A stretch of 64,000 bases of DNA. It comes from Macrostomum lignano. Taxonomy: Eukaryota. The first letter of the stretch is position 1, and every line of letters begins with the position of its first letter. The DNA is taken from positions 305,370 to 369,369 of the forward strand of contig NIVC01001059.1 in the NCBI GenBank assembly GCA_002269645.1. The letters run 5' to 3'. Below are positions 1-57,900 of the stretch, one piece after another. The translations under genes and the position numbers were made by a program. Under the pieces are notes generated by a model that worked only from the letters and a program-made list of their open reading frames with translations, was not told the origin of the DNA and searched no databases.

Positions 1-156
1 TTTAATTATACTAAATCCTAGATCCTGAAGAGCATAAAAAGGGCAAAATGAGCTAAGTTGATCATCCATGCAGCAGAGAAAGCGTGATATTGAATACGTA
101 ACTTAAATGTATATAAATAAATATTATTCAGCCTGGGCCCTGGCTGGGATGGCTGC

Positions 157-3100
157 TCAGTCGTGCACCTCCTCGGTTACTGAATCAGCAGATGGCACAG
201 GTAGCTGCTCCAGCTGCTGCACCTTCTGCGGCTGCTGACGGTCACCGTCACCCGCTTTCTCATCGTCCTGCAGAAAAAGCGAGCGGGAGGGCGCGGCCTC
301 GAGCTCCTCCTGAGTGAGCACCCGCACCGCATACTCCCCATCAATATCGGCCAGTCCGTGCACCTCCACCGGCTTGTTGCCCTTCAGCAGCTTGGCCAGG
401 TAGGACGTGATGGGTGGGGTGATCACCTGGCCTGGCACTAGCACCGGGATGCCGGGTGGGTAGGCCAGCACCTGGTCGCAGCAGACGCGGCCAGTAAGAG
501 CCTCGTTCGGCCTGCGGATAGATAGCGGATGGGCGGGATAGATACGGATGGTGGGGTAGATATCGGATGGTGGGGTAGATAGCGGATGGGCGGGGTAGAT
601 ATCGGATGGTGGGGTAGATAGCGGATAGGCGGGTAGATAGCGGATGGTGGGGTAGATAGTGGATAGGCGGGGTAGATAGCGGATGGGCGGGGTAGATAGC
701 GGATGGGCGGCGGGGTAGATAGCGGATGGGGGGTAGATAGCGGATTGGTCGGGGTAGATAGCGGATGGCGGGGTTGATAGTGGATAGGCGAGGTAGATAG
801 CGGATGGCGGGGTAGATAGTGAATAGGCAGGGTAGATAGCGGATGGGCGGGGTAGATAGCGGATGGGCGGCGGGGTAGATAGCGGATGGCGGGGTAGATA
901 GCGGATGGCGGGGTAGATAGCGGATGGCGGGGTAGATAGTGAATACGCGGGGTAGATAGCGGATGGGCGGGGTAGATAGCGGATGGGCGGGGTAGATATC
1001 GGATGGGCGGCGGGGTAGATAGCGGATGGCGGGGTAGATAGTGGATAGGCAGGGTAGATAGCGGATGGCGGGGTAGATAGTGAATAGGCGGGGTAGATAG
1101 CGGATGGGCGGGGTAGATAGCAGATGGGCGGCGGGGTAGATAGCGGATGGCGGGGTAGATAGTGGATAGGCGGGGTAGATAGCGGATGGCGGGGTTGATA
1201 GTGGATAGGCGAGGTAGATAGCGGATGGCGGGGTTGGAGAGCGGGCGTGTCACTCACCGGCCATCATCGTCCAGCAGATAGAGACACTCGCCCGACTCGT
1301 AGAAAGCGCTGCGCGGCAGGCAAGCCAGCCAGCTGAAGTGCGGCACCTCCGCCATCCGGTAGGACTGCTTCGGCACCCGGCGCCGGTCCTTGGCCAGGCG
1401 GAACATGGCGTCGCACAGGCGGGACACCTTGCTGCGGGTGGTGCCCACGCCCAGCAGCAGCGTCAGCGTGCTGAATGTCGACTTCTCGCCCTGGATGTTG
1501 TACTTGTCGAACAGCACCTGGCATTGATGGTCGGGAAGGTTTTAAAATTCTGTATAGTCAGTGCATTCGACTTTTCTACTTTGATTTCTTAGGCGCGACA
1601 CAAAATTCTTTTTTTAATTTTACAGTGAGAATCCTGTTGTGTTGTGCACTTTTACGGTGCCTGTGTACCTGCCTCCCAGCGGGCTGGGGTCACCCCTCAA
1701 CTAGTTGTTTACAGTACTTTTTGTTATTCCCCCCTTTGCGTTGCCGCAGCCAGAGGCTTAAGTCGGTGTGAGTTTTGGCATTTGTTCGCTCGCCCTGCGT
1801 GGTGATTGGTCGCGGCCAGCCAGTCGCGTAGTGATTGGCTGGGCCGGTGGCGGGCGTGGTGCTGACGTCCCCCGGGGGAATGGCTGGGGGTTGGTGGGGT
1901 GGTGGAGTTGAGAGCGCGTGGCCCTCCCCCCTCCGCGGGCGTGTGCTATTTAACATCGCTCGCGGCGGATTGGAGCGGTGCGCGTCTCGACTGTCCCCTC
2001 TCTGTGAACTCGATTTTTCGTCAGAGCTATATACACCGAAAAAGGCCATCTACCTGAGCCCTGAGCGACAGCCGCCAGCTAAGTAAGTGCGCATTCTGCC
2101 TTTTTTCTTTCGGTTGCCTAGGGGGGCAGAGAGTCCGTGTGTCCGGACACCGACTCAGCTAGTTGGGGTTGATACCAGTACGTCAGAAGGATACCTACCG
2201 TACGCCTCTACGCCTCTACGCCAGCCAGTGCGTCCCGACGCCTCGCTGAAGGCGGCCCGCACCACTGCGTCCCGACGCGTGGGAAGGCTGCGTGGGTGCG
2301 TCCTGACGCCCCAGACTGTCAGGGGAAGTGCTCGCCCTAGCGCCCGCGTGCAGGCTTAGCAAGGACCCGATTGTACTGTACCCTGGTAGGACTACCCTAC
2401 TGCCGGGCCGGGGGCTGCAGGGATACAACAATCCCTTCAAATCCAACAATGAAAAACTCATATTCACTGACATCCCAAAGTGAGGACTAAAACTCGCTCA
2501 AATCCCACAAACCTGTTCCATCTCGTCGGCGCTGTAGCCAGACTTGGAGATGTCCACAGTCAGCTTGGTGGGGTCCAGCCGAACCCCGTCATTGCGCACC
2601 TCATCGGGCAGGAGGTCGCCGATGTCCAGTACGCGGAAGACGCCGGTGGAGTTGATTTTCTGGCGAAGTTCAGCGCCCAGTTTGAGGGTCCGGTCCAGCA
2701 GCTTGTAGCCCTCCATCATTGCCTGCTTCCGGCCAACGTCCAGGCTGGCGATGAGAGCGTACTGTGGGCTCGTGGAGGCGTACATGTTGAAGTTCTCACG
2801 GAAAAGGTGCTCGTCGAACTCCGGGTCGTTGACGTGGACCATGCTGGCCTGCGAGAAGGAGGTCAACGTCTTGTGGATGCTCTGCGTTACGTAGTCGGCG
2901 CCGCACTCCAGCGCGGTGGGCCGGAAGGCCGGATGGAAGCGGGCGAAGGCGTACCAGGCCTCGTCAATGATCACCTGCGGGATTTGGTGGCGTTGGGAGC
3001 GCGGGTTCCGAAATTGCAAAGTGGCATCCCGGTTATGAAAGGTTCATGAGATGCTTTGAAACACATTGACTATAACAACGGCACCAAGCCGATTCAAGCG

Positions 3101-4149
3101 TTTAAAGGCAGCACTAAAGTACTCAGGCGGCATCCGTATAAACAAACCTTGATGCCGGCCTTGTGCGCAGCCTCAACAATGGGCTTCAGGTCGTACAGCA
3201 TACCATCGTAGGTGCAGCAGGTGAGAATGAGCGCCTTGGCGTCCGGATTCTCCTTGATAGCCCGGTAGATGGTGGCCTTCGGCACAGGGCCGAAGATGCC
3301 GAACTCCCTGCACACGGAGGAGTCCAAGTAGATGGGCCGAGCGTCCGACAGGATCACGCCGTGGTGGACGGACTTGTGGCAGTTGCGGTCCAGCAGGAGC
3401 TTGTCGCCCGGGGCCAGCAGAGTCTGGAAGATGATCTTATTGGTGGTGGAGGTGCCGTTGGTGGCCAGATAGGTCTTGCGGGCGCCGAAGGCCGTGGCGG
3501 CCAGGTTCTGGGCGGTGGCGATGACCCCAGTGGGGTGCAGCAGCGAGTCCAGCATGGGCACGGAGACCGACAGGTCGGCCCTGAGCAGATTCTCCCCCAC
3601 GAACTCGTAAAAATCGCTGACCCAGGGCGAGTTCTTGAGCGAGTCGCCGCCAGAGTGACCGGGCGAGTGCCAGGAATCCTTGGCCATCTTCACATAGGCC
3701 TGCAGCGCATCGTAGAACGGCGTGGCGGACTTCTCGGCCAGCTCGGCGGACAGGATGCGGAACCAGCCGTGGTAGTCGGGCTCGTCCCGGTCGAAGTAGC
3801 CGTCCACGGCGTGGCTGACCAGCTCCTCCACCATGGCGCGCTCGTCATCGCTGAGCACAACATAGAGGGACAGCTCCGGCCGCCAGGAGTTGATGCGGTT
3901 GGCCAGGTCCAAGGCCGCCTGGCCGGGGCCGAGGCCGGCCAGCGACTTGTCAATCACCACCAGCTGCAGGTCGCCGTCCGCCTTCACCGTCTGCATGGCG
4001 TGGTCTCCGGTGCGCGCGGACACGAATGCGATGCCGAACGGGTTGTCAAGGCGAGCGCTGGCCGAGGCCAGGCCGCTCAGAGCCGGCTCCAGCCAGGCCG
4101 CGTCGTTGCTGACGACCAGCGCACGGCTTACCGGCTTTAGCGACGGCAT
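157..4149 (-). CDS. Bacterial-type (class I, AAT-fold, PLP-dependent) Orn/Lys/Arg decarboxylase with N-terminal receiver-like wing domain; 4 coding exons, 692 aa
   Basis: Exons (minus): 4149-3148, 2974-2513, 1517-1258, 511-157. All introns are GT..AG (GTTTGT/CAG, GTTTGT/CAG, GTGAGT/CAG), phases 0,0,2. Joined length 2079 nt = 692 aa + TGA in one frame. Family motifs in order: SPGHSGG, NGTSTTNK, DRNCHKSVHH, TYDG, DEAW (just after intron 1), TQSIHKTL (PLP lysine), STSPQYALIASLD, DPTKLT, YPPGIPVLVPG. The first ~140 aa resemble the wing domain of LdcI/AdiA/SpeF-type enzymes. Substrate not determinable by eye. Confidence 0.93.
512..1235. repeat. Minisatellite, ~19-22 bp unit GGGGTAGATAGCGGATGG(G)C, filling intron 3 of the decarboxylase
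   Basis: Tandem copies are visible directly. The array runs up to the acceptor at 512-514 and explains the Pro-rich pseudo-ORFs 157..1257 and 438..1253. Confidence 0.97.
1800..2090 (+). promoter_or_regulatory. Promoter-like GC-rich segment inside decarboxylase intron 2, antisense to the gene
   Basis: Three ATTGG (reverse CCAAT) boxes near 1805, 1833 and 1968, TGACGTC near 1863, CTATATA near 2027, then a GTAAGT donor consensus near 2083. Motif-level evidence only. Confidence 0.3.
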
Positions 4150-4194
4150 GGCCTGCTGCGAGCATGCAGAGATTTGAGTCCGGCTCTGCCACTG

Positions 4195-5082
4195 CAGGGG
4201 TCTGGCTTTATTTACTGCTGGGGTCTGGCTTTATTTACTGCTGGGGTCTGGCTTTATTTACTGCTGGGGTCTGGCTTTATTTACTGCTGGGGTCTGGCTT
4301 TATTTACTGCTGGGGTCTGGCTTTATTTACTGCTGGGGTCTGGCTTTATTTACTGCTGGGGTCTGGCTTTATTTACTGCAGGGGTCTGGCTTTATTTACT
4401 GCAGGGGTCTGGCTTTATTTACTGCTGGGGTCTGGCTTTATTTACTGCTGGGATATGGCTTTATTTACTGCTGGGGTCTGGCTTTATTTACTGCTGGGGT
4501 CTGGCTTTATTTACTGCTGGGGTCTGGCATTATTTACTGCTGGGGTCTGGCTTTATTTACTGCTGGGGTCTGGCTTTATTTACTGCTGGGGTCTGGCTTT
4601 ATTTACTGCTGGGGTCTGGCTTTATTACTGCTGGGATGGGGCCTGATTCCGCTGGGGTGGGGTCTGATTCTGCTGGGGTGGGGTCTGATTCTGCTGGGGG
4701 GGGTCTGATTCTGCTGGGGTGGGGTCTGATTCTGCTGGGGTGGGGTCTGATTCTGCTGGGGGGGTCTGATTCTGCTGGGGGGGTCTGGTTCTGCTGGGGT
4801 GGGGTCTGATTCTGCTGGGGAGGGGTCTGATTCTGCTGGAGTGAGGTCTGATTCTGCTGGGGTGGGGTCTGATTCTGCTGGGGAGGGGTCTGATTCTGCT
4901 GGGGGGGTCTGATTCTGCTGGGGTGGGGTCTGATTCTGCTGGGGAGGGGTCTGATTCTGCTGGGGTGGGGTCTGATTCTGCTGGGGAGGGGTCTGATTCT
5001 GCTGGGGGGGGTCTGATTCTGCTGGGGAGGGGTCTGATTCTGCTGGGGGGGGTCTGATTCTGCTGGGGTGGGGTCTGATTCT
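4195..5082. repeat. Two adjacent minisatellites: 23-bp GCTGGGGTCTGGCTTTATTTACT (~4195-4635) and 21-22-bp GGGGTCTGATTCTGCTGGGG(T) (~4636-5082)
   Basis: Direct tandem repeats starting ~45 bp upstream of the decarboxylase ATG. The two units share GGGGTCTG and CTGCTGGGG. Confidence 0.96.
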
Positions 5083-6263
5083 ACTATCAACTAAGACAGT
5101 GAAAATACAGACAACACAAAGACCGCTGAGTTCCTGATCCAGACTAAAACACTGTCCTTGGTCCAAAGACAAAAGGATGAAATTATCAATAAATTTATTA
5201 ATAAACAGGAATTAGCAAAATGGTGAATACAAGGCGGAATACTAGAGCGCGCCGGCTGCCGAAAACAGTATAGGGAAGTCGGCACTGGCAGGCATAAAAT
5301 ATAAGGCGTTTTCTATCCTAAATTGGAATCACGTAGAAAAATTTACATCATTTTTCTCCTTACGCATCACCCTACTACTATTAAGTAGGAATAAGTGAAA
5401 ATAGAAATTAAAAAAAGGCGAAGGCCGCTGCCAGAGCCGGAAATGTTAATAAATGGAGACAGAGGAAGACGGTGACTCGAGTGCGGAATGAGCTGCTGGG
5501 CCCTGCCTCAGTTTACTGATAGGCTTGAATACAATAGAAACTAAACTGCTGAAAAAGTGGCTCTCAGTAAAACTCCTAAAGGTTCGTTGAGTTCAGTGCG
5601 ATTGAAAAAGTTCACTGAAATGAGGCTCTGGGTGAGACGACACAACAGGACAGGGAGCTGCGCAATGCTGCTAATCGTGTATAGGATAAAGACTGAGTAT
5701 GCTGAGTACAGTACGCTGAGCACGTGCAGTATGCACAGCAAATATACAGTATGCTGAGTAGCTGAGTAGCTCAGGCGGGCCGGGCAGCGCCAGTCTCAAT
5801 TTTCTGCTTCATTCTCCGAGCCGCTGGTGCTGCTAAAGCGTTGTGGAGCCAAAGAGGAGCTTGGCCTGCGGGTTGCAATGGGGCGATTTGGGACCCGTCA
5901 ATAAGATGTAAGCTGGTCAGACTGGCTGCGGAATTAGTCCATAAATTTGGCCTGCACAAAGCGGTAACTACTACTATAAATACGAGTTTGCTTAGATGCG
6001 TGAACTCTGCAGGCTGGCGGCTTGAAATGGTTAGGCATGTGAGCGATAGGTTGGGGATAGACTTTGCGGCCAGGGAGGCCCTTCTACATGTACATGGAGT
6101 AGATAGCAACCAATTTACAGGTGCTGTGAGGCGCTAGGGTGAGCTAGGATTGACGCCACAGCTGCATCCTTGAGGTCCTCCACCTGAGCTCAGACCACGT
6201 CCCGACCTGCGGCCGTTCGCAGAACGAGAAATCGCGGAAATCGGCGACGAACTTGAGCGGGGC

Positions 6264-6487
6264 CGGATGCGGAACCGGATGCGGAACCGGATGCGGAACC
6301 GGATGCGGAACCAGATTCGTAACTGAATATGGAACTAGATCCGGAACCAGATACGGATCCGGAACCAGATACGGATACAGATACGGAACCAGATACGGAT
6401 CCGGAACCAGATACGGATCCGGAACCAGATCCGGAACCAGATCCGGAACCAGATCCGGAACCAGATGCGGAACCAGATGCGGAACCA
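6264..6487. repeat. Short-period repeat (GGAACCAGATCC / GGAACCGGATGC, 12-bp with 6-bp variants)
   Basis: Tandem copies seen directly. Confidence 0.92.
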
Positions 6488-7489
6488 ACAGCGTCGATTG
6501 CCGGCAGTGGCGGCTGCAGTTATCAAAATTCAGCACCGATTATGAGTAAGTAGGATAAGAGAAATTAGAAAGAAGATTCTGGAGCTTGATTTGAGTCGCA
6601 ATTTTGGTAAGCTACGGCAGAGAAATAAAAATTCTGCATCCGAGTTATGGATCTTTAGACGGCACGAATATTGGAATTAAAAAAATCAAATGAGAAATTT
6701 CTGGCAAAAAAACCATAATGCGATTATGACAAAGCAAGCCAATACGTAGTAAGAAAGCACTACTACGAGTAGGACATCAGGGCACGGCAAACTGTGCAAT
6801 CCGACAACATAAACAGAAACGATTCCGATTTCCATCTTCCTCTACTGTAAGTAGGCTTTTCAGAATAAAATAACAAACAATCGACCATTTCTCAGGCCAA
6901 TCGAATCGGCAAAAAAACTACAAATCGCTGCAAAACAGTTCGCCCCGCCCTGCCCGCATGTTGCGGACTTGCGCGTCCACCTGGCCGGGGCTCACCTGGC
7001 CCACCTACCTCTGGCCAAGCCGGTCGAACTTCCTAGACAGCGACGGCGAGCGCTTCTGCTTGAATTGGTGCACGGGTTTTCGGGCTAAACAGGCTGGGCG
7101 AGGACTTGCACACTGCTGGCTAATTGGCTAATTGGCTAATTGGCTAATTGCTTGATTGGCACAACACCCAGGAGCAGCGTGCGGTGGCTCAAAGGTCACA
7201 TATTCCCAAAATGAAACATAAAAAATCAATTTTTCTCTTCAAAACCTAAGGTTGAAAGTAAAAGCAACAGTGGCAATGAGAAGGAACTGGAGCAAACTGA
7301 GCACAACAACAGCGTATTATAGTAAAACAAAAGGTGCAGTTTTCTGTTTAAATGTAACCGAATACCAAATTAAAAGTGGAGGAGTGCCGGGGAGCTTTTC
7401 TTTACCGTCATCTTGTCCACGGGAATGCTGGACCAGCTCCTCAGGCTGGGGGGTGAAGTAGTGAGGGTGGGAGGATGAGACACGCTCAC

Positions 7490-8230
7490 ACACAAACACA
7501 GACACACACTCTAGTCACATATTCACAGAAACTAATCATATAATCACACCATTCACACAAACTAGTCACACATTCATAAAACTAATCACAACTTCACAAA
7601 AACTAGTCACATATTCACACAAACTAGTCACACATTCACACAACTAGTCACATATTCACACAAACTAGTCACACATTCACACAAACTAGTCACATATTCA
7701 CACAAACTAGTCACACACTCACACAAACTAGTCACACATTCACACAAACTAGTCACACTTTCACACAAACTAGTCACACACTGACACAAACTAGTTACAC
7801 ATTCACACAAACTAGTCACACATTCACACAAACTAGTCACATATTCACAGAGACTAGTCACACACTCACACAAACTAGTCACATATTCACACAAACTAGT
7901 CACATATTCACACACTCTAGTCACATATTCACACAACTAGTCACACATTCACAAAAACTACTCACATATTCACACAAACTAGTCACATATTCACACAAAC
8001 TAGTCACACATTCACACAAACTAGTCACATATTCACACAAACTAGTCACATATTCACACAAACTAGTCACACATTCACAAAAACTAGTCACACATTCACA
8101 CAAACTAGTCACATATTCACACAAACTAGTCACATATTCACACAAACTAGTCACAAATTCACACAAACTAGTCAAATATTCACACAAACTAGTCACACAT
8201 TCACACAAACTAGTCACATATTCACACAAA
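7490..8230. repeat. 21-bp minisatellite CACACAAACTAGTCACA(T/C)ATT
   Basis: Tandem copies; source of the CEYVTSL pseudo-ORFs. Confidence 0.96.
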
Positions 8231-8889
8231 CCAATCAACGCGCAATCACACAAGCCGTGTGACGCACCTCATCGAGACGGTGGCAGCCACCTGAATGCTG
8301 GTGACAGATGCGAAGTCAAGCTGAAAAGGCCGGGCGGTTTCTTAGAATTGAGAAACCCGCTAGCAACTGTCCTGCCATTCGCTGGATTCACATCAAGTTA
8401 AATGCCAAATATGTCAGGTGCGAGCTCAGGCGTGGATTTATTAATATTGAAACACAGGAAAAATGTACTTTAATTGGCACAAATAATTGGATGCGCAGAA
8501 ATTCTACGAGCAATTTGGGGCAAATATCAGATACTACACATGACAGCAATAGCTGCCTGTTAGGGTGGTGAGTTATCACATCACTGGTTAGAACGAGCTA
8601 AAATAAATATGAATTAAAACTGACCTTATGGACAATGGACAATGAGATTAACAATGACTACGGACAGTGAGATGAACAAAGACTATGAACAGTCGGATGA
8701 ACAAAGAATATGAACAGTGAGTTGAAAACAAAGACTATGGGCAAGGAGAGGAACAAAGACTATGAACAGTCGGATGAACAAAGAATATGAACAGTGAGTT
8801 GAAAACAAAGACTATGGGCAGGGAGAGGAACAAAGACTATGGACAGTGAGATGGAATCGATACAGTACTAAGACAAAGGATTTGCAGCC

Positions 8890-22451
<13,562 letters not shown>

Positions 22452-40600: not shown

Positions 40601-43600
40601 ATAAATGTTGATAAGATCTATGACGAGCCTATAGAAGACACAGAGCCGCTTGTTTCCTTTCAAAGCAACCAAGAGAAGCAACTTGCAGTTAACGAACCAT
40701 TGAAAAAAGCAACTGATTTTGAAAGGCTCACTCCAGGCACCATCGAGTGGGTGAAGCCCGGTGATGTCTTCAAGATCAACGGTCAGCTGATTATTGTTGA
40801 AGAGGTACAGCATGCACCCAATAACGTATATGAATTTAAAGCGATTCATTGCACTAAAAACAAGAAACAGTCCAAATTTACACTTTTCAAAGACAAGAGA
40901 GTATCAAGAGAAAATTTCACGGTCAATGTGATCAAATCGAAAAGTACACACCGTCTGCAGCCCGATTGCCAGCTCGCTCTTTTCCCAACGTCCCATTGCC
41001 ACCCGCCTAAGGATGTTGTCCAAAGAGCTCGCAGCCGCCTGAACGAAATTCAGAGTGACTCGTCACTTTTCGTCAAGTGGTGCAAGATGAAGGACCCAAC
41101 CCACTGTTCCGAGATCCTTGTGCCGATCTTCGTGTCAGACGACCACGAAATCCACGAGGTGAAAGTTAAAGACCACCTGAATTTGCAGCATGTTGCTGGC
41201 CCACTTCACGGAGAGGTTTCAAATATCGACAACCTGAGTGACGAATCGCTGCTGCTAACGATGTGCATTCAAACTAGCAGGATGCGATCCGTTCCATTGG
41301 TTCGAATCGAAGAGAAGGAGCTTCTCGCCCCCGTTCCGGTAGTAGCGTCAGTTCCCCAGTGCGTGGACGAGGAGGAACTTCTCGCCAGGGTTGAAATCCT
41401 GGACAGACTTGTGTTCAGCAAAGACATCTCTACCCTGGCATTCTGCCGACTGCTTACTAATCCGAATCTTCGTGATAGCGCATGGGGTGAGCAGGTGGCG
41501 ATGCTCCCAGACACCGAAGCTAAAGTAAGTCCTCTCTGCAAAAGCACGAGTCCAGAAAGTTTAAAAATCGGCAGCATCATTTCAATCGATGGAGCATACA
41601 CAGTGGTCATCGCAGTTCGCTGTGGTGCTGATAGAGTCCATGTAAAGATGGTGCAGTATGGAGCTCAGTCATTGGATGAAGATGAAACAGAGCGCCAGAT
41701 CAAGTACATAATCAAGAAAAGAGAGACGGACACACAGCTCAGCGTACACAATGAGATTAAAAAGGATTGCCCTCTGTACCACCCTGTTCTTGGGCCACAA
41801 GGTTTATATGCAGAAGAAGCATTGACGCCTATTTTACTTCAAAGCCTGAAGAAGGGTGATGTGATTCGAATAAGCTCGCGCTGGATCATTGTTGAAGATT
41901 CGGAATTCGCAAATGGCTCGTGCACTGTGGTCGCTATTTTCTACGACAAAAGAAAGCTTCTCGAGACAAACATGGTAATTGTACATGATCTCCAACCGTA
42001 CGGTCACTGCCCAACTTCTTGGGCAAACTGCCTCCACCAGAGTCTGTAAGGGTGGACCCCAAGGCGGAGTCCTCACCCCGACGCTCTGGAACCTGGTCAT
42101 GGACGCTCTTTTGAGTGACTCCCGACCCGACCCCGTCTTCAAAGTCGGGTATGCTGATGACGTCACGGCCATTGTGGCAGGACCGTCTCCCAGCACGCTC
42201 AGGGATCTGATGCAGAGATTTATCCGCAAAGCAGAATCCTGGCCAATGACAATGGTCTGGAACTCTCTGAGCCCAAAACCGTTGCCATTATGTTTACCAG
42301 CAGACTACGCTGGAACATACGTCCTCTGCAGCTCTACGGCAGAGATATTGCCTTCGCGCACCAGACCAGATGTCTCGGGGTCATACTTGACCACCGGCTC
42401 AACTGGTCCTCCCACGTGAAAGCAAAAGCCAAGCGTGCCTCAGCCATCCTGGCCCAGCTCCGACGAGCACTTGGCACTTCTTGGGGTCTATCCCCAAAGC
42501 GGCTTTGGTGGATCTATACTTCTGTAGTTAGACCTGCCATTACGTACGCCTCTGTTGTCTGGGTTAGCGCTACCCAGGTCAAAAGCCATGCAGACCTGCT
42601 CAACACGATCCAAGGCAGAGCGTGTAGGCTCATCTGCAACGCCACCAGGTCCACGCCCTTTGCTGGCATGGGGGCCTTCCTTAATCTTCCGCCTCTTGAC
42701 CTCTTCATCAGGGGTGAGGCGGCTAGAACGACGCGGCGTCTAATTGATGCCGGCGTCAAATTCATTTACATGAGAGCACCTGCTAAGCGGAACCTTGTCC
42801 CGCATAGCGATCTGTGCCTCAACTTTCTCAACGAGTGTCAGGCCAATCGCGTCTTCACCGATGGCATTGCCTCAACGCTCAACCTGAGACAGCGCTACTC
42901 CGTAGCTATCGACTCGCGCGATAACATCAATGACCATTGGAACCCTGGTGAGCTTCATTGCTACACCGACGGTTCTAAGCAGTCAGCCAACACCGGCTTT
43001 GGTGTTGGAATCTTTCTGAACGGGAGGGTCATCGCTACCCACGCTCAATACACTGGGGTCAACTCCAGTGTTTTCCAAAATGAAGTTCTGGCCATCAGCT
43101 CCTGCACTGCAGAGCTTCTCGCCACTGGCGTTACTGGTAAGAACATCATTTTCCATTCGGACAGCCAAGCTGCCTTGCACGCCATCAGTGGCTGCAGCAC
43201 CAACTCTGCTACAGTCCTTGACTGTATCAAACTCCTCAATGTGTTGGGTTCCGCCAACAAAATTACCCTTAAGTGGGTTCCGGGGCATGTGGGGATCCGA
43301 GGAAATGAGTTGGCTGACACCCTTGCAAAAGTTGGTGCCTCCGGCTCCTCTCTCGGCCCCGAACCTCTTGTCCCGATTCCTGGCTGCGTCATCGACTCGC
43401 GCATCAAAGCGTGGATCAGGACTCAGCACCGCTCGACTTGGGCGAACCGCACGAACTGCAGGCAATCCAGAGGCGCTGTCCCTCAGCCCTCTCACCAGCT
43501 CCGGAAGCTCCTCTTGCGCCTCTCGCGCAGAGACATCCGGGCTGCCACCATGACCCTCTCTGGTCACGGCTGCTTCTCCAGGCACCAGCACCTGCAGGGC

Positions 43601-46600
43601 AACGCCACCAACGCCACCTGTAGCTTCTGCAACTCAGGTGACGAAACCGCTGAGCATTTCGTCAGCATCTGTCCCGCCTTCACGCGGGCCAGACTCACTT
43701 ACCTCGGGCCACACACATCTATTACTGAAGCGTGCAAACCCGAAAACTTTAATCAGCTCATGCGCTACCTTCGGGCCACCCGCAGGGCTGAACTCTCCTT
43801 TCCAGAGAGCACCATAGCTGCTGGCGACACTGGGGGACCTCCCTGGGCGGCGCCAACCCTCCGTCCATAGCGACGCGTCGGCCGTTCAGGGACTAGCGGA
43901 ATGGGCGCCCGCGCCTTCCCGCTGTGTCCCCTCCGGGACAGCCCTGCAGCTAAGTCAAGTAAGTCAACAGGGTAATTAGACATACTCTTAACTTTAGGGT
44001 TATAAACCCTAGTAAGCAAGTTGAACCAGAGGGCTGGCTTTGTCGCTATGCTGAGGCCTGGTGCTTCGACCCAGACATTGTGATCAAAAGAGCTCATAGT
44101 CGACTTAACGAGAGTCAGTACTCACTGATCTCTAATAACGGAGAGAATTTTGTGAAATGGTGCAAGACAAAGTGTTCCAGTCACAGGCCAGAGTGCCTTG
44201 TCCCAATTTACTTGCCCAATGAGCACACTCACTCGGTGAAAGTTGGAGATCATCTGAACTTCACATGTGATAGTGGTACAAAGCTCCATGGAGAAGTGAC
44301 TGAGGTGACAGAGTTGAAGTCGAAGCAGAATATTCTACTCTGCATGAACGCGATAAAGCCGAAGTCAATGTGCTGTGTGCAAAAAAGTGAGCTCACTCTT
44401 GTCGGCGCTGTGAGCGTCATTGTAACGGCCCCACTGTCCGTCAGTGAAGCAGAGCTGTCGCAGCGAGTTCTGTTTATCGATAATTTGGCTTTCAAAGGAA
44501 CAGAAAGCTCAATGAATATCTGCCGTTTTCTAACTAAATCAAAACTTGAGCTTGAAGACTGGAAGGACGTAATCTGCCGCAGTCAGCCCTTCAAAGATGC
44601 AGCAACTGAGCAGACTATTCTCTGCCGCCAAAGATGTCCAGATCAGTTGAAAGTTGGCAATATAATATTTCTGGATGGTGTGTACCGAGTTGTTGCCGAA
44701 ATCCACCTTTGTGATGCTGAAGCAGCTGGACGATTTAAGATCGTGACTGTTCAATATGACTTGAGTCTGACAGAGAGTGGTGTGTCAAAGCTGAAGTACG
44801 CGATTCGAGCAGAGGAGACGGAAGCCGTGCTGTGCGTTCACAACAATCCAAGTTTGGACTGCATCTTACACGGTGCTGGAAGAGATATGCCAATGTATAC
44901 ATCTAATAAAGTTTACGATGTACGAACCATTTCACAGGGCTGTGTCATTTCGATGAGAAGAAGGTTTCTGCAGTATCAGCATTCCGTGGTTGTCAGTGAT
45001 CCTACACTGGAAGGAGATAGCGGATCAGCTCAGTCCTGTGCTTCATTGGAGGTTATTGAATACGCGATGAAGCTTACTAGCAGAAATGAAGTTGTGAAAG
45101 ATAAAATTCGAGTCGATGTTTCAAAGCAGGAAGTCTACCTCATCAAGTATGATAAAATCTGTGAAGAAAAGAAATACTCTCCAGACAAAGTGATTGAGAG
45201 AGCCCACTCAAGGCTGGGGGAAAAGCAGCACAACACACAATGGAACAACAGTCGGGATTTCGCTCGCTGGTGCAGCCTTCAGCACCCAAGCAACAGGGAG
45301 CAGTGCAGGATTCCAGTTACATCGGCTCAGCAGCTGGTCGATTTCAAAAGAGGTCACGTTAAGTTTCGTAAGTCGCCAGAAATTTATACCCACGACGCTG
45401 TAATGAGAGACTGCACAGCAGTTGAAGGTTGCAGCGACATCGTCAGGGTTACTCTGTATGAAAATAACCATGAGCAGCGTAGAGTGAGGCTCGAGGACTT
45501 AACCATCGATAAAGGTGAGAGCTTGATTCGTCGGGTGAATTACGAAGGCAATAAGGAATTCGCCACCGATGAGTTCAGCATCTTGAAGGACCTGATTGAT
45601 TGCACTTTTCTGAATGCCGATGATGACGTTAAAGGATGGACGGGGCAAGAGAAAAAGTGTGGCAGTCGAGTCACCAGCCGAGACTTCTGTTATTGGCTCA
45701 AAACTACGAAAAAAGAACTCTGCAGCATTAAATACTTGTTTGAAAAAAACCTTGAAACCATGCAGAAAAAAATGGCGAAACTGTGCTGCGAAGGCGTCCT
45801 ATATGACAATACGGATGAGCAAAGACGTCTGAGAATCGAAATCGAGCATGGAGTAGACAGGCGCGACTTAAGACTTCATGACCACATCATTCTGAACCGT
45901 ACGGTAGATGAAAAAGTAAAAGAAGTTCATTTTATCCTAGTTGAGTGGAACGAGGAGACACACACTGGTGTCGGTGTGACGTACGAGTTTCCACCAGAAC
46001 CTACTGGAATTGGATTTATGAAGTTCAATGGATTTCTTCGAGTGAGCGGCCCTAATCAGATGGATAAGGTCGTTCACAACTCGGAGCCTGACTGGAATGA
46101 GATTGATGACAGGTTCAACACCCTAAGGGGCATCAAGGAGTACCACCTCTTGCGCAACAATTGCGAGCACTTTGTAAATTTTTTGATTTATGGCCGCGGT
46201 AGCTGCCTTCAGCTGAGCAAGCGGGTCTGGCAGATCGCCCACACGTTACCGAGCGCTATTCAAAACCTAGCTTCCTCCGTGACTCGAGTACTGCGAATGG
46301 CCGTCGCTGTAGTGCTGAGAGCGAATCCAACCATGGGAGAAGCATTTTCGTTTATTCCAGACATCCTCGCAGCCGAAGGTGGAAGCATCGCTTTGATCGG
46401 CATTGTGAATTTTGTTGCCTGGCTACTGCTTCGACATCGCCGCGCAAACAGTGGGATGTCCCTTCAGGAGTACCAGGAGAGAAGGCTGGGCATCCTGTGC
46501 CGCGCACTTATTCCCATCGCGGGAAGCATCGCAGTAGCACTCATCACATTCTTCAACCCTTTCTCGGCAGGCCTGACTGGCGCAGGTGTCGGTGTTGGTG

Positions 46601-46671
46601 TCACGACCTTCGGAATTGCCTGTGCCATACCGAAGCTGCTGGTTATTATCAAGGCCTGGAGGCATCCGTAG
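40601..46671 (+). pseudogene. Large tandem LRAT/PLAAT-like (permuted NlpC/P60) repeat protein with C-terminal hydrophobic segments, interrupted by a LINE
   Basis: Joining 40700-41980 to 43978-46671 gives one stop-free 1,324-codon frame, open upstream to 40601. Repeated V-x-x-RA-x-SRL...F-x-x-WC motifs and a final YHLLRNNCEHFVNF. Two or three hydrophobic helices at the C-terminus. No in-frame ATG at the 5' end (possible acceptor at 40615, or ATG 40563 with a 1-nt indel). Confidence 0.75.
41981..43970 (+). mobile_element. 5'-truncated LOA/R1-group LINE (RT C-terminal part, RNase H, Cys/His motif)
   Basis: TSD GGTAATT at 41974-41980 and 43971-43977. RT: PQGGVLTPTLW, GYADD. RNase H: YTDGSK, VFQNEVLAI, SDSQAAL, WVPGHVGIRGNELAD. 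Then CSFC...ETAEHF..CP. Short-repeat 3' tail AAGTCAAGTAAGTCAA. Confidence 0.93.
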
Positions 46672-53870: not shown

Positions 53871-54959
53871 GCTCAGCGTTTAAATATTTATACTATATTT
53901 ATAATTCTATCTTAGTATTGACAAGAAGTTAAAGAACTAGCAAGTATAAAACACAGAGGGATATACGTGCTATAAAGTTGTAATTATTGAATTGGAATAG
54001 CCAAGAAAAAAGTGAAAAATCGTGCAAAGTGAGGCTGTTAAGGCAGTCAAAATTCAACAAAGTTAAATAGTTATAAATTACTGCTTTTTGTTTGGGAAAA
54101 TCGGAAGTGATTCTGGTTCTGGAATCGCGCGGTAATATGAAAGGCTAGTTGAAAAACGGCATGCGTGAACCATGTAATTTACGAGCGTACTTACTTGTAA
54201 TTCCAAGAAACAAGTTCCCACTACGGTTCACTAATTATCTTACTAGCCAGAGGCCAGAGGCTAGGTCTAGGATAGGTCTAATTCTACTTTTTTTGCTCTG
54301 TTACTCCAAGAGGATGATGTCTATATAGTCTATATGTGGTGTAGATTTACTAGTCAATTTATCTATTATAGAGATAGGCCTAGGCTAATATAAAGCAATT
54401 TTGTGCTCATGTACTACAGAACATAATAAGCTATAAGCAATAAGCATTAAACTGCATATGGTGGCTGTGGGTAGAAAATGCATCTATTCTACAATTTCAA
54501 GGTTGTAAATTGTTTGACTTGCTCTGCATTGCCTATAACTATAGGCCTAATGACATCATCAAAAAATTGAACGTCTATACTCCCAGTACCAGAACCAGTA
54601 CCAGAACCAGTACCAAAAAATAAAATACAAAATACAAGTAAAAAAACGAAAAATAACCTACAAAAATGTCTAAAATAGTAAAAAATCAACTCTAGCAATT
54701 ATTATAACCGTTAACACAGCGTTCAACATATTTCGTTTCAGCGAATTACATTACAGCATAACTTAATGCCTATTAAAATACTTATTTAAAAACTAAAAGT
54801 AAAACACCGAAATTTAACATTCTAGCTGAAAAACCTTAAAACAAATATATATAAAACTAAAAAAACCTATCAACAATTGGTGATGCCATAGATACAATAT
54901 AAATATACCAAAAAACTGTACATGTAATATGTTCAATTCCTGTAATTTTTCACCAAAAT

Positions 54960-57900
54960 TACTTTAGTGTACTTCGGCAGGAACCATTGTGAGTACGAAG
55001 CTGAAAACTGAGATCTGGAAGGAAACATTATCAATCTAGAAGCCTACAAGACGCCAAGGCTCCATCTGTTCCCTACTCGAACTTACAGACTCCCAAGTCC
55101 CCCTGCTCAGTACACTCAGCTGCAGAAAGTACTTTAGTGTACTTCGGCAGGAACCATTGTGAGTACGAAGCTGAAAACTGAGATCTGGAAGGAAACATTA
55201 TCAATCTAGAAGCCTACAAGACGCCAAGGCTCCATCTGTTCCCTACTCGAACTTACAGACTCCCAAGTCCCCCTGCTCAGTACATTAATATGCAGAAAGT
55301 ACTTTAGTGTACTTCGACAAGAACCATTGTGAGTACGAAGCTGAAAACTGAGATCTGGAAGGAAACATTATCAATCTAGAAGCCTACAAGACGCCAAGGC
55401 TCCATCTGTTCCCTACTCGAACTTACAGACTCCCAAGTCCCCCTGCTCAGTACATTAATATTCAGAAAGTACTTTAGTGTACTTCAGCAGGAACCATTGT
55501 GAGTACGAAGCTGAAAACTGAGATCTGGAAGGAAACATTATCAATCTAGAAGCCTACAAGACGCCAAGGCTCCATCTGTTCCCTACTCGAACTTACAGAC
55601 TCCCAAGTCCCCCCTGCTCAGTACATTAATATGCAGAAAGTACTTTAGTGTACTTCGACAAGAACCATTGTGAGTACGAAGCTGAAAACTGAGATCTGGA
55701 AGGAAACATTATCAATCTAGAAGCCTACAAGACGCCAAGGCTCCATCTGTTCCCTACTCGAACTTACAGACTCCCAAGTCCCCCTGCTCAGTACATTAAT
55801 ATGCAGAAAGTACTTTAGTGTACTTCGACAAGAACCATTGTGAGTACGAAGCTGAAAACTGAGATCTGGAAGGAAACATTATCAATCTAGAAGCCTACAA
55901 GACGCCAAGGCTCCATCTGTTCCCTACTCGAACTTACAGACTCCCAAGTCCCCCCTGCTCAGTACATTAATATTCAGAAAGTACTTTAGTGTACTTCGAC
56001 AAGAACCATTGTGAGTACGAAGCTGAAAACTGAGATCTGGAAGGAAACATTATCAATCTAGAAGCCTACAAGACGCCAAGGCTCCATCTGTTCCCTACTC
56101 GAACTTACAGACTCCCAAGTCCCCCCTGCTCAGTACATTAATATGCAGAAAGTACTTTAGTGTACTTCGGCAGGAACCATTGTGAGTACGAAGCTGAAAA
56201 CTGAGATCTGGAAGGAAACATTATCAATCTAGAAGCCTACAAGACGCCAAGGCTCCATCTGTTCCCTACTCGAACTTACAGACTCCCAAGTCCCCCCTGC
56301 TCAGTACATTAATATGCAGAAAGTACTTTAGTGTACTTCGGCAGGAACCATTGTGAGTACGAAGCTGAAAACTGAGATCTGGAAGGAAACATTATCAATC
56401 TAGAAGCCTACAAGACGCCAAGGCTCCATCTGTTCCCTACTCGAACTTACAGACTCCCAAGTCCCCCCTGCTCAGTACATTAATATTCAGAAAGTACTTT
56501 AGTGTACTTCAGCAGGAACCATTGTGAGTACGAAGCTGAAAACTGAGATCTGGAAGGAAACATTATCAATCTAGAAGCCTACAAGACGCCAAGGCTCCAT
56601 CTGTTCCCTACTCGAACTTACAGACTCCCAAGTCCCCCCTGCTCAGTACATTAATATGCAGAAAGTACTTTAGTGTACTTCGACAAGAACCATTGTGAGT
56701 ACGAAGCTGAAAACTGAGATCTGGAAGGAAACATTATCAATCTAGAAGCCTACAAGACGCCAAGGCTCCATCTGTTCCCTACTCGAACTTACAGACTCCC
56801 AAGTCCCCCCTGCTCAGTACATTAATATGCAGAAAGTACTTTAGTGTACTTCGACAAGAACCATTGTGAGTACGAAGCTGAAAACTGAGATCTGGAAGGA
56901 AACATTATCAATCTAGAAGCCTACAAGACGCCAAGGCTCCATCTGTTCCCTACTCGAACTTACAGACTCCCAAGTCCCCCCTGCTCAGTACACTCAGCTG
57001 CAGAAAGTACTTTAGTGTACTTCGACAAGAACCATTGTGAGTACGAAGCTGAAAACTGAGATCTGGAAGGAAACATTATCAATCTAGAAGCCTACAAGAC
57101 GCCAAGGCTCCATCTGTTCCCTACTCGAACTTACAGACTCCCAAGTCCCCCCTGCTCAGTACATTAATATGCAGAAAGTACTTTAGTGTACTTCGCAGGA
57201 ACCATTGTGAGTACGAAGCTGAAAACTGAGATCTGGAAGGAAACATTATCAATCTAGAAGCCTACAAGACGCCAAGGCTCCATCTGTTCCCTACTCGAAC
57301 TTACAGACTCCCAAGTCCCCCCTGCTCAGTACATTAATATGCAGAAAGTACTTTAGTGTACTTCGACAAGAACCATTGTGAGTACGAAGCTGAAAACTGA
57401 GATCTGGAAGGAAACATTATCAATCTAGAAGCCTACAAGACGCCAAGGCTCCATCTGTTCCCTACTCGAACTTACAGACTCCCAAGTCCCCCCTGCTCAG
57501 TACACTCAGCTGCAGAAAGTACTTTAGTGTACTTCGACAGGAACCATTGTGAGTACGAAGCTGAAAACTGAGATCTGGAAGGAAACATTATCAATCTAGA
57601 AGCCTACAAGACGCCAAGGCTCCATCTGTTCCCTACTCGAACTTACAGACTCCCAAGTCCCCCCTGCTCAGTACACTCAGCTGCAGAAAGTACTTTAGTG
57701 TACTTCGGCAGGAACCATTGTGAGTACGAAGCTGAAAACTGAGATCTGGAAGGAAACATTATCAATCTAGAAGCCTACAAGACGCCAAGGCTCCATCTGT
57801 TCCCTACTCGAACTTACAGACTCCCAAGTCCCCCCTGCTCAGTACACTCAGCTGCAGAAAGTACTTTAGTGTACTTCGCAGGAACCATTGTGAGTACGAA

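What the first reader, a model, noticed from the sequence alone, without database searches (positions are those of the whole stretch)
157..4149. Intron-containing bacterial-type winged Orn/Lys/Arg decarboxylase in an animal genome: probable domesticated horizontal transfer
Seen: a complete 692-aa ORF with all class I basic-amino-acid decarboxylase motifs and the receiver-like wing domain. It is split by three canonical, phase-compatible spliceosomal introns, has GC-rich exons like the neighbouring host gene KANK, and carries host-style minisatellite in intron 3. Established: this AAT-fold family (LdcI/CadA, AdiA, SpeC/SpeF, LdcA) is characteristically bacterial, while animal ornithine decarboxylase is an unrelated fold-type III enzyme. 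Inference: an old bacterium-to-animal transfer that gained introns and stayed intact, potentially giving the animal a new route to cadaverine, agmatine or putrescine, or an acid-stress system. The introns argue against contamination.
Basis: partly seen in the sequence, partly recalled or inferred. Interest (0 to 1): 0.88.

Follow-up and report, generated by a model that had tools for sequence, protein, structure and literature searches.

The report
Bacterial decarboxylase gene domesticated by flatworm
The flatworm Macrostomum lignano carries an intact bacterial-type amino-acid decarboxylase gene, split by three animal-style introns and captured from a Chromobacterium-like bacterium; it is a clean, testable bacterium-to-animal gene transfer, but what the enzyme makes in the worm is unknown.

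Summary
On the minus strand, four exons (4149-3148, 2974-2513, 1517-1258, 511-157) splice through three GT..AG introns into a stop-free 692-aa protein. This is exactly GenBank PAA72828.1 (BOX15_Mlig029890g1) of the flatworm Macrostomum lignano.

[quoted passage not shown] Apart from M. lignano models, the top 120 database hits carry bacterial names or none. They are 65-76% identical and about 652 aa long. The protein nests inside the Chromobacteriaceae.

Bacterial homology ends at the ORF borders. The exon junctions align without gaps to the bacterial proteins. Three near-identical copies lie on contigs of 197-369 kb, each behind the same ankyrin (KANK-like) host gene. Contamination is therefore excluded.

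New here:
- A second, 76%-identical paralogue lineage exists elsewhere in the genome and is sister to this one. That indicates one transfer, then an old duplication.
- Purifying selection is detectable.
- The bacterial stop codon was lost, adding about 37 disordered residues.
- Expression probably uses spliced-leader trans-splicing behind the upstream gene.

The substrate is unproven. The pocket looks basic-amino-acid-like, and bacterial synteny points to ornithine or arginine. I found no paper describing this transfer.

The parts
3148..4149 (-). Exon 1 (aa 1-334): start codon at 4149-4147, wing domain, and the first half of the PLP domain including H258 of the DRNCHKS motif.
   Evidence: If left unspliced, the ORF stops 17 codons into intron 1.
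3724..4149 (-). N-terminal CheY-like receiver ('wing') domain, aa 1-142, with a (beta-alpha)5 fold.
   Evidence: AF2 model with pLDDT 91. Foldseek matches REC domains at TM 0.70-0.74 and the AdiA wing at 0.66-0.68. Pfam support is sub-threshold only.
2975..3147 (-). Intron 1: 173 nt, GTTTGT..CCGCAG, phase 0. It lies at an AAG|GT site that the closest bacterial gene also has.
   Evidence: It is 100% identical in all three copies.
2513..2974 (-). Exon 2 (aa 335-488): D338, W341, S366, H368, the PLP-binding K369 (codon 2872-2870) and T402.
1518..2512 (-). Intron 2: 995 nt, GTTTGT..TGCCAG, phase 0.
1630..2429 (-). An 800-bp insertion inside intron 2, flanked by duplicated GGATT. It is present in copies g1 and g2 and absent from g3, whose intron 2 is 194 nt.
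1258..1517 (-). Exon 3 (aa 489-575, the last codon split): carries the E499-K500 motif.
512..1257 (-). Intron 3: 746 nt, GTGAGT..CCGCAG, phase 2. Its body is a 20-bp minisatellite of 36 copies at 519-1234.
   Evidence: Its length varies between copies: 746, 811 and 604 nt.
157..511 (-). Exon 4 (aa 575-692 plus TGA at 159-157): the end of the C-terminal domain and the extension.
160..270 (-). C-terminal extension of about 37 aa (aa 656-692) beyond the position of the bacterial stop codon. It is predicted to be disordered.
   Evidence: The bacterial proteins end at ...SRSLFA or similar. pLDDT is below 40 over 658-692.
4150..4175 (-). Putative spliced-leader trans-splice acceptor (..CTCGCAGCAG|GCC ATG), 3 nt upstream of the start codon.
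   Evidence: The CDS of copy g2 is annotated from this GCC as 5'-partial. The M. lignano SL ends in ATG, which would be in frame. This is an inference, not an observation.
4191..5082 (.). Two host minisatellites (23-bp and 21-bp units) filling most of the 1.65-kb spacer to the upstream gene.
5796..14496 (-). 3' part of the upstream same-strand host gene (product 1524-1527 aa, C-terminal ankyrin repeats of KANK type; the Ank exon is at 9453-8923). This is context, not part of the transferred DNA.

Best explanation
A single ORF for a winged (REC-domain) AAT-fold, PLP-dependent amino-acid decarboxylase moved from a Chromobacteriaceae-like betaproteobacterium into an ancestor of Macrostomum lignano. 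It has been kept there as a working gene.

Shown:
- Only the ORF is of bacterial origin.
- It acquired three spliceosomal introns, later invaded by a host minisatellite and an 800-bp insertion.
- It lost the bacterial stop codon, adding about 37 disordered residues.
- It duplicated into two lineages, A (this locus) and B (elsewhere), now 76% identical.
- Lineage A was then triplicated by the recent genome duplication.
- The active site is split over exons 1 and 2, so only spliced mRNA can encode an enzyme.

Inferred:
- The mRNA is made by SL trans-splicing to the CAG three bases before the ATG. It may come from a transcript started at the upstream KANK-like gene, which would explain how a promoter-less bacterial ORF became expressed.
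- The cytosolic enzyme removes the alpha-carboxyl group from a basic amino acid. Ornithine or arginine is the most likely substrate and lysine is possible. The product would be a diamine (putrescine, agmatine or cadaverine) made independently of the antizyme-controlled animal ODC.
For: Identity and origin:
- The protein is identical to PAA72828.1, and the window equals NIVC01001059.1.
- Apart from M. lignano models, every named protein among the best 120 hits is bacterial, at 65-76% identity.
- In an NJ tree, A+B is monophyletic (200/200) and sister to bacterial P0003/P0004 (200/200), inside the Crenobacter/Vogesella/Gulbenkiania/Chromobacterium/Aquitalea group.
- P0003 and P0004 lie on plainly bacterial contigs, with DnaB, flagellin, argF and argG.

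Integration:
- tblastx homology to the bacterial contig is confined to the ORF.
- Three copies sit on contigs of 369, 359 and 197 kb, each downstream of the same Ank gene.
- The independent ML2 assembly produced a model fusing the same two genes.

Introns: the junctions are gapless and the splice sites are identical in all copies. The GenBank models derive from a genome-guided RNA-seq transcriptome (PMC5730564).

Constraint:
- dN/dS is 0.19-0.27 among the copies (binomial P 0.007-0.03).
- Of the columns invariant in 84 bacterial sequences, A keeps 153 of 160 and B keeps 149 of 157. Divergence at variable columns is about 30%.

Fold: AF2 pLDDT 83.9. The best PDB matches are Rv2531c, AdiA and LdcI. 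The wing is REC-like.

Substrate pocket: S375 and E499 resemble the Lys/Orn/Arg enzymes. The glutamate decarboxylase Rv2531c has R576 and N731 at those positions.

Synteny: dc-(argD)-argF-argG is conserved in betaproteobacteria.

Trans-splicing hints.
Against: - I saw no RNA-seq read or transcript contig myself. Exact look-ups found no transcript-derived copy.
- No expression table that I could search lists the gene.
- The substrate is not established. The protein scores far below the cut-offs of every characterised subfamily.
- Its best solved relative is a glutamate decarboxylase, not a basic-amino-acid one.
- The dN/dS estimate rests on only 8-11 substitutions per pair.
- The tree is NJ only. 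The two flatworm branches are long, so A+B monophyly could be inflated.
- The locus of paralogue B, and so whether it shares intron positions, could not be retrieved.
- The trans-splice acceptor matches the published YTNCAG motif only in its CAG.
Confidence: 0.8

Rival explanations
1. Bacterial contamination or a chimeric assembly: the ORF belongs to a culture-associated bacterium and was mis-joined to flatworm DNA.
For: The protein is 72-76% identical to Chromobacteriaceae proteins. Its GC3 of 0.87 resembles that of the donor-like gene.
Against: - Three introns interrupt the ORF at gapless positions.
- A host minisatellite and an insertion polymorphism lie inside the introns.
- No other bacterial gene lies within 10 kb either side.
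- Three long contigs and a second assembly show the same neighbours.
- No bacterium is closer than 76%.
Confidence: 0.01
2. A transcribed but functionless relic: the transfer is real, but the gene is drifting and encodes no active enzyme.
For: I saw no direct expression or activity data. Seven positions that are invariant in bacteria have changed in A (for example T159S, F225L, H396Y). The flatworm branches are about twice as long as the bacterial sister branch.
Against: - The 2079-nt ORF is intact in all three A copies, and lineage B also has an essentially full-length ORF.
- About 95% of bacterial-invariant columns are retained against about 30% change at variable columns.
- dN/dS is about 0.2.
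- All catalytic residues are kept.
Confidence: 0.1
3. A working enzyme with a substrate outside Lys/Orn/Arg (for example glutamate, as in Rv2531c, or another amino acid), or one re-purposed after transfer.
For: The best sequence and structure match among solved proteins is Rv2531c, a glutamate decarboxylase long mis-annotated as a KOR decarboxylase. That paper argues that many family members catalyse other reactions. The protein is below every NCBIfam subfamily cut-off.
Against: The residues proposed to select glutamate in Rv2531c (R576, N731) are S375 and E499 here, as in Lys/Orn/Arg enzymes. The extra N-terminal domain of the long form is also absent. Synteny with argD-argF-argG is conserved in the bacterial family.
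Confidence: 0.12
4. Two independent transfers from related bacteria produced lineages A and B.
For: A-B identity (76.3%) is no higher than A-P0003 (75.9%) or B-P0003 (76.0%).
Against: - A+B is monophyletic in 200/200 bootstraps.
- Quartet-informative sites favour AB|PO (13-24) over the alternatives (1-7).
- A and B share S->T and H->Y changes at columns invariant in 84 bacteria.
Confidence: 0.05
5. Vertical inheritance: an ancient eukaryotic gene lost from nearly all other animals.
For: OKR_DC_1 proteins exist in some eukaryotes, namely apicomplexans and plants.
Against: The flatworm clade nests deep inside one betaproteobacterial family at 72-76% identity, and no eukaryotic hit other than M. 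lignano appears in the top 120. The reported eukaryotic members belong to other subgroups, the long Rv2531c-type and the wingless ancestral form.
Confidence: 0.02

Closest known systems
Uncharacterised ~652-aa winged decarboxylase family of Betaproteobacteria (Chromobacterium, Aquitalea, Gulbenkiania, Vogesella, Crenobacter, Ideonella, Nitrosospira), annotated 'arginine/ornithine decarboxylase' or 'aminotransferase class I/II-fold PLP enzyme'
   Same: 65-76% identity over 94% of the length. The domain order is the same (REC-like wing, PLP domain, short C-terminal domain), and 153 of 160 family-invariant residues are kept.
   Different: The flatworm gene has three spliceosomal introns, about 37 extra C-terminal residues, 3 extra N-terminal residues, host flanks and no argF/argG neighbours. 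I found no characterised member of this family, so its substrate is unknown.
Rv2531c of Mycobacterium tuberculosis (PDB 9N0O/9N0N/9N0P), a 'long-form' OKR_DC_1 enzyme shown to be an L-glutamate decarboxylase
   Same: It is the best solved match by sequence (E 6e-81) and by fold (TM 0.74, rmsd 4.3 A). It shares the REC, PLP and C-terminal domains, and H-K, T402/T606 and the PLP lysine are conserved.
   Different: It has an extra N-terminal domain that is absent here. Its proposed glutamate-selecting residues R576 and N731 are S375 and E499 here. Identity in the Foldseek structural alignment is only 27-28%.
Enterobacterial LdcI/CadA, LdcC, AdiA, SpeC/SpeF and Pseudomonas LdcA (winged AAT-fold Lys/Arg/Orn decarboxylases)
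   Same: The same fold and wing, the same PLP-attachment motif (S-x-H-K..SQAS), and the same DRNCHKS, DEAW and EK motifs.
   Different: Structural identity is 21-26%. NCBIfam scores are 200-243 bits against cut-offs of 794-1310. The protein is shorter (652-692 aa against 710-756). The wing orientation in the model differs (rmsd about 9 A). There is no antiporter or acid-stress context.
Other documented bacterium-to-animal transfers that became spliced, expressed genes, for example the nematode rml-3 (PMC10473587, listed); the bdelloid rotifer and plant-parasitic nematode cases are from general knowledge
   Same: A single bacterial ORF, nested phylogenetically in its donor clade, linked to host genes, with gained introns and retained under selection.
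   Different: The recipient is a free-living flatworm, for which my searches found no such report. The gene is a polyamine-type decarboxylase. The old A/B duplication and the possible operon/SL route to expression are particular to this case.
Animal ornithine decarboxylase (alanine-racemase fold) with antizyme control
   Same: It may make the same product, putrescine. M. lignano has an antizyme gene, so the canonical system is presumably present.
   Different: The fold is unrelated (established knowledge). A bacterial-type enzyme would not be expected to bind antizyme; this is an inference.

Membership tests
Pfam OKR_DC_1 superfamily (AAT-fold Orn/Lys/Arg-type decarboxylases) | Major PLP domain PF01276 above the gathering score | tested here: met
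   338.8 bits against a cut-off of 27; residues 143-518 cover the whole profile.
Pfam OKR_DC_1 superfamily (AAT-fold Orn/Lys/Arg-type decarboxylases) | C-terminal domain PF03711 | tested here: met
   32.6 bits against a cut-off of 24.2; residues 518-620.
Pfam OKR_DC_1 superfamily (AAT-fold Orn/Lys/Arg-type decarboxylases) | PLP-attachment motif with the catalytic lysine, plus the PLP-contacting His, Asp and Trp | tested here: met
   TQSIHKTLTSFSQAS at 364-378 (K369), with H258, D338, W341, S366 and H368. All are invariant in a 49-sequence alignment. The PROSITE-style pattern I used was recalled from memory.
'Extended/winged' form of the AAT-fold decarboxylases | N-terminal CheY-like receiver (REC) domain fused to the decarboxylase | tested here: met
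   The AF2 model of residues 1-142 (pLDDT 91) matches REC domains at TM 0.70-0.74 and the AdiA wing at 0.66-0.68. At sequence level there are only sub-threshold hits: Response_reg at E 0.22, and OKR_DC_1_N at E 0.024 for the bacterial sister.
Characterised subfamilies LdcI/LdcC, AdiA, SpeC/SpeF (NCBIfam models) | Score above the curated whole-protein cut-off of the subfamily model | tested here: not met
   LdcC 243 against 968; CadA 223 against 1056; SpeF 201 against 1310; AdiA 200 against 1167; SpeC-type 200 against 794.
Rv2531c-type 'long-form' glutamate decarboxylases | Additional N-terminal domain before the REC domain (protein about 930-950 aa) | tested here: not met
   The protein starts directly with the REC domain at residue 8 and is 692 aa long.
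Rv2531c-type 'long-form' glutamate decarboxylases | Basic or neutral pocket residues proposed to bind the gamma-carboxylate (R576, N731, R718) | tested here: not met
   The aligned residues are S375, E499 and M486 (alignment; determinants from PMC13506015).
Domesticated bacterium-to-animal horizontal transfer | Phylogenetic nesting inside a donor clade, with no animal orthologues following the species tree | tested here: met
   NJ tree with 200/200 support for the bacterial sister and for nesting in the Chromobacteriaceae. Apart from M. lignano models, every named protein in the top 120 is bacterial. I could not run an ML tree or an explicit survey of metazoan proteomes.
Domesticated bacterium-to-animal horizontal transfer | Physical linkage to host genes in independent assemblies | tested here: met
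   Three contigs of 197-369 kb with the same upstream Ank gene. The ML2-derived model P0002 fuses the two genes.
Domesticated bacterium-to-animal horizontal transfer | Spliceosomal introns that are actually removed, and expression | tested here: inconclusive
   The intron structure is certain from the sequence. The GenBank model comes from an RNA-seq-guided transcriptome. I saw no read or transcript directly.
Domesticated bacterium-to-animal horizontal transfer | Purifying selection after transfer | tested here: met
   dN/dS is 0.19-0.27 among the copies (few sites). About 95% of bacterial-invariant columns are retained in both A and B.
Domesticated bacterium-to-animal horizontal transfer | Presence in related host species (dating the event) | not testable with these tools
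   The genomes and transcriptomes of other Macrostomum species are not searchable here. Exact-sequence look-ups found nothing.

The most novel reading that the evidence does not exclude
Two things would make this more than another transfer case.

First, the flatworm may use two diverged bacterial-type decarboxylases (lineages A and B) as a standing, antizyme-independent route to a diamine. Such a route could feed the high polyamine demand of a regenerating, neoblast-rich animal, or make a compound animals normally cannot.

Second, the promoter-less bacterial ORF may have become expressed by landing behind a host gene and acquiring a spliced-leader acceptor ('operon capture'). That would be a general way for SL trans-splicing lineages to domesticate foreign genes.
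Probability: 0.3. Interest if true: 0.75.

Novelty: new member of a known kind. Interest (0 to 1): 0.62.

Why it matters
Well-supported bacterium-to-animal transfers with intact, spliced, selected genes are still few. My literature searches found none reported for free-living flatworms.

M. lignano is transparent, regenerates, and has working RNAi and transgenesis. The function of an acquired metabolic gene could therefore be tested directly in vivo.

The gene also offers a clean natural experiment on de novo intron gain: three introns, one of them at a pre-existing AAG|GT site. It bears on how foreign ORFs become expressed in genomes that use SL trans-splicing.

The enzyme belongs to an uncharacterised subfamily of a decarboxylase superfamily whose annotations were recently shown to be unreliable. 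Characterising either the flatworm or the Chromobacterium protein would fill that gap.

Tried and rejected
- GC content and GC3 as evidence for or against amelioration: rejected, because donor-like and host genes are equally GC3-rich.
- Remnants of other bacterial genes around the locus: none within 10 kb either side in three copies.
- Transcript-derived proteins or independent contigs by exact look-up: none for the full protein or for the exon-1 ORF. A search with the junction-spanning C-terminal 260 aa found no M. lignano fragment of lineage A. It did reveal paralogue B.
- Retrieving the B locus: not in the window or in the three fetched loci. The exact look-up failed.
- Closer bacterial donors: the genome and metagenome scans found nothing above 66-71% identity.
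- Introns 1 and 2 as duplicates of one another: no similarity beyond shuffled controls.
- Other copies of the 800-bp intron-2 insertion in the available sequence: none, so it could not be classed as a transposon.
- Glutamate decarboxylase, as in Rv2531c: considered and judged unlikely from the pocket residues.
- Literature and supplementary-table searches for the gene ID or for reports of this transfer: nothing.
- A KN motif in the upstream gene: not found, so 'KANK' is only partly supported.

Full report
**1. The observation**

Reading the minus strand of window 1-4500, I joined 4149-3148, 2974-2513, 1517-1258 and 511-157. This gives a 2079-nt reading frame with no internal stop, encoding 692 aa. 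The three intervening segments are 173, 995 and 746 nt. They begin GTTTGT, GTTTGT and GTGAGT, end CAG, and lie in phases 0, 0 and 2.

Left unspliced, the first exon's ORF stops 17 codons into intron 1. The PLP-binding lysine lies in exon 2. Only a spliced mRNA can therefore encode an enzyme.

Pfam gives OKR_DC_1 at 338.8 bits over the whole profile, plus OKR_DC_1_C. The PLP-attachment motif (residues 364-378, K369) and the DRNCHKS, NGTS, DEAW and STSP motifs are all present. They are invariant in a 49-sequence family alignment.

The exon junctions align without a single gap to nine homologues, eight of them bacterial and one paralogue B. The introns are thus exact insertions into a bacterial-type ORF and cannot be explained by chance GT/AG pairs. 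Intron 3 is almost entirely a 20-bp minisatellite of 36 copies.

**2. Where the window comes from**

The spliced protein is identical to GenBank PAA72828.1 (BOX15_Mlig029890g1, UniProt A0A267FGD5) of the free-living flatworm Macrostomum lignano. The first 14,149 bases of the window are 100% identical to contig NIVC01001059.1 (369 kb) of assembly Mlig_3_7.

Two further copies, g2 and g3, lie on contigs of 359 kb and 197 kb. In all three, the gene follows the same 1524-1527-aa ankyrin-repeat gene on the same strand. The older, independent ML2 assembly yielded a gene model (P0002) that fuses that ankyrin gene to the decarboxylase.

The ankyrin domain of the neighbour matches KANK1, KANK2 and KANK3 end to end (E about 1e-41). 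No KN motif was recorded or found, so 'KANK' is only partly verified.

The rest of the window is typical host DNA: many minisatellites, retroelement and transposase fragments, and a 171-bp satellite.

**3. Origin of the gene**

A search of 5.8 billion proteins returned the M. lignano models and, for the rest of the best 120 hits, proteins of 645-682 aa at 65-76% identity that carry bacterial names or none. The named ones are Chromobacterium, Aquitalea, Gulbenkiania, Pseudogulbenkiania, Vogesella, Crenobacter, then Ideonella, Leptothrix and Vitreoscilla.

The two closest, P0003 and P0004 (76%), lie on plainly bacterial contigs carrying DnaB, flagellin, SodB, argF and argG. tblastx of that bacterial contig against all three flatworm loci (10 kb either side) finds homology only across the decarboxylase ORF. 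A single ORF was therefore retained.

In an NJ tree of 88 sequences, the flatworm proteins are sister to P0003/P0004 in 200/200 bootstraps. They sit inside the Chromobacteriaceae-type clade. Genome and metagenome scans found nothing closer.

Contamination is excluded by the introns, the host repeats inside them, the three long contigs, and the absence of any other bacterial gene. GC3 of the gene (0.87) resembles both the host's neighbouring exons (0.74-0.89) and the donor-like gene (0.93), so composition is uninformative. Third-codon-position identity to the closest bacterial gene is only 61%, which is consistent with a transfer that is not recent.

**4. A second lineage, and the age of the transfer**

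A search with the C-terminal 260 aa turned up another M. lignano protein, P0124. Its cluster mate P0244 is a 1237-aa model in which a full-length decarboxylase is fused to an amiloride-sensitive channel (ASC) gene. This paralogue, B, is not in the window.

B is 76.3% identical to the window's protein (A). That is about the same as either one's identity to P0003. Even so:
- A and B group together in 200/200 bootstraps.
- Quartet-informative sites favour A+B (13-24 sites) over either alternative (1-7).
- A and B share S->T and H->Y changes at columns that are invariant in 84 bacterial sequences.

The simplest reading is one transfer followed by an old duplication. The three A copies, in contrast, differ by dS of about 0.01. 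That fits the recent genome duplication and assembly redundancy described for this species.

I could not retrieve the B locus, so shared intron positions, the cleanest test, remain unchecked.

**5. What happened to the gene in the host**

- Three introns were gained. Intron 1 lies at AAG|GT, a site the closest bacterial gene also has. Introns 1 and 2 are unrelated in sequence.
- Intron 2 is 194 nt in g3 but 995-996 nt in g1 and g2, because of an 800-bp insertion flanked by duplicated GGATT.
- Intron 3 varies in minisatellite copy number: 746, 811 and 604 nt.
- The bacterial stop codon was lost. The protein runs on for about 37 residues, which are predicted to be disordered.
- The DNA upstream is host minisatellite, and the DNA downstream is AT-rich.

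**6. Is it maintained?**

All three A copies keep the full ORF and identical splice sites. Pairwise dN/dS is 0.19-0.27. Nonsynonymous changes are fewer than expected under neutrality (binomial P 0.007-0.03), though only 8-11 substitutions are involved.

A test over deeper time is stronger. Of the columns invariant across 84 bacterial homologues, A retains 153 of 160 and B retains 149 of 157. Both differ from the nearest bacterium at about 30% of the variable columns. This is the pattern of a protein still under the family's functional constraints. The flatworm branches are nevertheless roughly twice as long as the bacterial sister branch.

**7. Expression**

The GenBank annotation of Mlig_3_7 was produced from a genome-guided transcriptome (StringTie/TACO on RNA-seq plus a de novo assembly). 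Gene ends were set from trans-splicing and poly(A) reads (PMC5730564). The annotated intron structure therefore implies spliced transcripts. I did not see reads myself, and exact look-ups found no transcript-derived copy.

The CDS of copy g2 is annotated as 5'-partial, starting at the GCC codon just before the ATG. That GCC follows ..CTGCTGCTCGCAGCAG. The M. lignano spliced leader ends in ..GCATG (PMC8629364), so an SL joined there would supply an in-frame AUG (M-A-M-P-S..).

The spacer to the upstream CDS is 1646 bp, of which 892 bp are minisatellite. That leaves about 750 bp, below the paper's 1-kb repeat-adjusted threshold for operons.

I infer that the gene is SL trans-spliced and may be co-transcribed with the KANK-like gene. 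That would explain how a promoter-less ORF became expressed. This step is inference, not observation.

**8. What the protein is and does**

The AlphaFold model is confident (pLDDT 83.9, pTM 0.86). Its best PDB matches are the Rv2531c dimer (TM 0.74), then AdiA, LdcI, LdcC, LdcF and LdcA (TM about 0.6).

The N-terminal 142 residues, modelled alone (pLDDT 91), match CheY-like receiver domains and the AdiA wing. This confirms the 'winged' form described in the literature (PMC8503589).

The protein is not a member of any characterised subfamily. NCBIfam scores are 200-243 bits against cut-offs of 794-1310.

Its closest solved relative, Rv2531c, was recently shown to be a glutamate decarboxylase. 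The authors warn that annotations in this superfamily are unreliable (PMC13506015). The residues they propose for glutamate recognition (R576, N731, R718) align here to S375, E499 and M486. S375 lies in the ..SQAS motif and E499 in the ..EK.. motif, as in the Lys/Orn/Arg enzymes. The extra N-terminal domain of the long form is also absent.

In betaproteobacteria the gene is followed by argF and argG in the two closest bacterial contigs and in 17 of the 21 other loci examined, most of the rest being too short to show them. In Nitrosovibrio an ArgD-like aminotransferase lies in between.

My best estimate is a cytosolic PLP-dependent decarboxylase of a basic amino acid. Ornithine or arginine is more likely than lysine. 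The product would be a diamine. M. lignano has an antizyme gene (PMC1874602), so such an enzyme would bypass the usual control of animal ODC; this is an inference. There is no antiporter, and the family is not the acid-inducible type.

**9. Comparison with what is known, and novelty**

The thing works like other bacterium-to-animal transfers that became spliced, selected genes. It meets the defining tests I could apply: nesting in a donor clade, linkage to host genes, introns and constraint. Direct expression evidence and distribution among related species remain open.

The gene models are already in GenBank and UniProt as 'hypothetical' or 'OKR_DC_1 domain-containing' proteins. Full-text searches found no paper that describes this transfer, and no search of mine turned up a bacterial gene transfer reported for Macrostomum.

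It is therefore a new member of a known kind. Three features are of wider interest: a double paralogue lineage, a possible operon/SL route to expression, and membership of an uncharacterised enzyme subfamily.

**10. Verdict**

Confidence that this is a genuine, integrated bacterial gene is about 0.95 or higher. Confidence that it encodes a working decarboxylase is about 0.75-0.8. Confidence in any particular substrate is low. Interest is 0.62.

Noticed in passing
not in the window; proteins P0244 (A0A1I8GP85) and P0124 (A0A1I8HIJ3) of M. lignano: A second decarboxylase paralogue lineage (B) is 76% identical to the window's protein and sister to it. In the ML2 annotation it is modelled as a fusion with an amiloride-sensitive (ASC/ENaC) channel gene. 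Its genomic locus and intron positions could not be retrieved.
   Followed up: partly
window 54956-64000: A long array of a 171-bp satellite, with at least 53 copies at 97-98% identity, runs off the end of the window.
   Followed up: no
window 4191-15351: At least nine unrelated minisatellite or microsatellite arrays (units of 4-31 bp, 200-840 bp each) fill the spacer and the introns of the upstream ankyrin gene. Intron 3 of the decarboxylase holds another such array.
   Followed up: partly
window 40700-46671 (+): Three large uninterrupted ORFs lie in series: 449 aa with no clear domain, 526 aa with RNase H, and 863 aa with three LRAT/NlpC-P60-type stretches. GC3 of the LRAT ORF is 0.52, against 0.74-0.89 for the host exons. 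This may be a mobile element with cargo.
   Followed up: no
window 37141-37944 (+) and 27220-28086 (-): ORFs with a retroviral-type integrase core (rve) and with a TNP-like RNase H N-terminal domain. These are transposable-element fragments.
   Followed up: no
window 1630-2429 (intron 2); absent from L002: An 800-bp insertion flanked by a duplicated GGATT is present in copies g1 and g2 but not g3. No other copy was found in the sequence available, so its nature (transposon or other) is open.
   Followed up: partly
L001, L005-L026 (bacterial loci): In betaproteobacteria the orthologous decarboxylase gene is almost always followed by argF and argG. In Nitrosovibrio an ArgD-like aminotransferase lies in between. 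This conserved neighbourhood hints at the substrate of this uncharacterised bacterial family.
   Followed up: partly
window 4150-4157; L004 9990-10006: The CDS of copy g2 is annotated from the GCC just upstream of the ATG as 5'-partial. The M. lignano spliced leader ends in ATG, so trans-splicing at this CAG would give an in-frame SL-borne start codon.
   Followed up: partly
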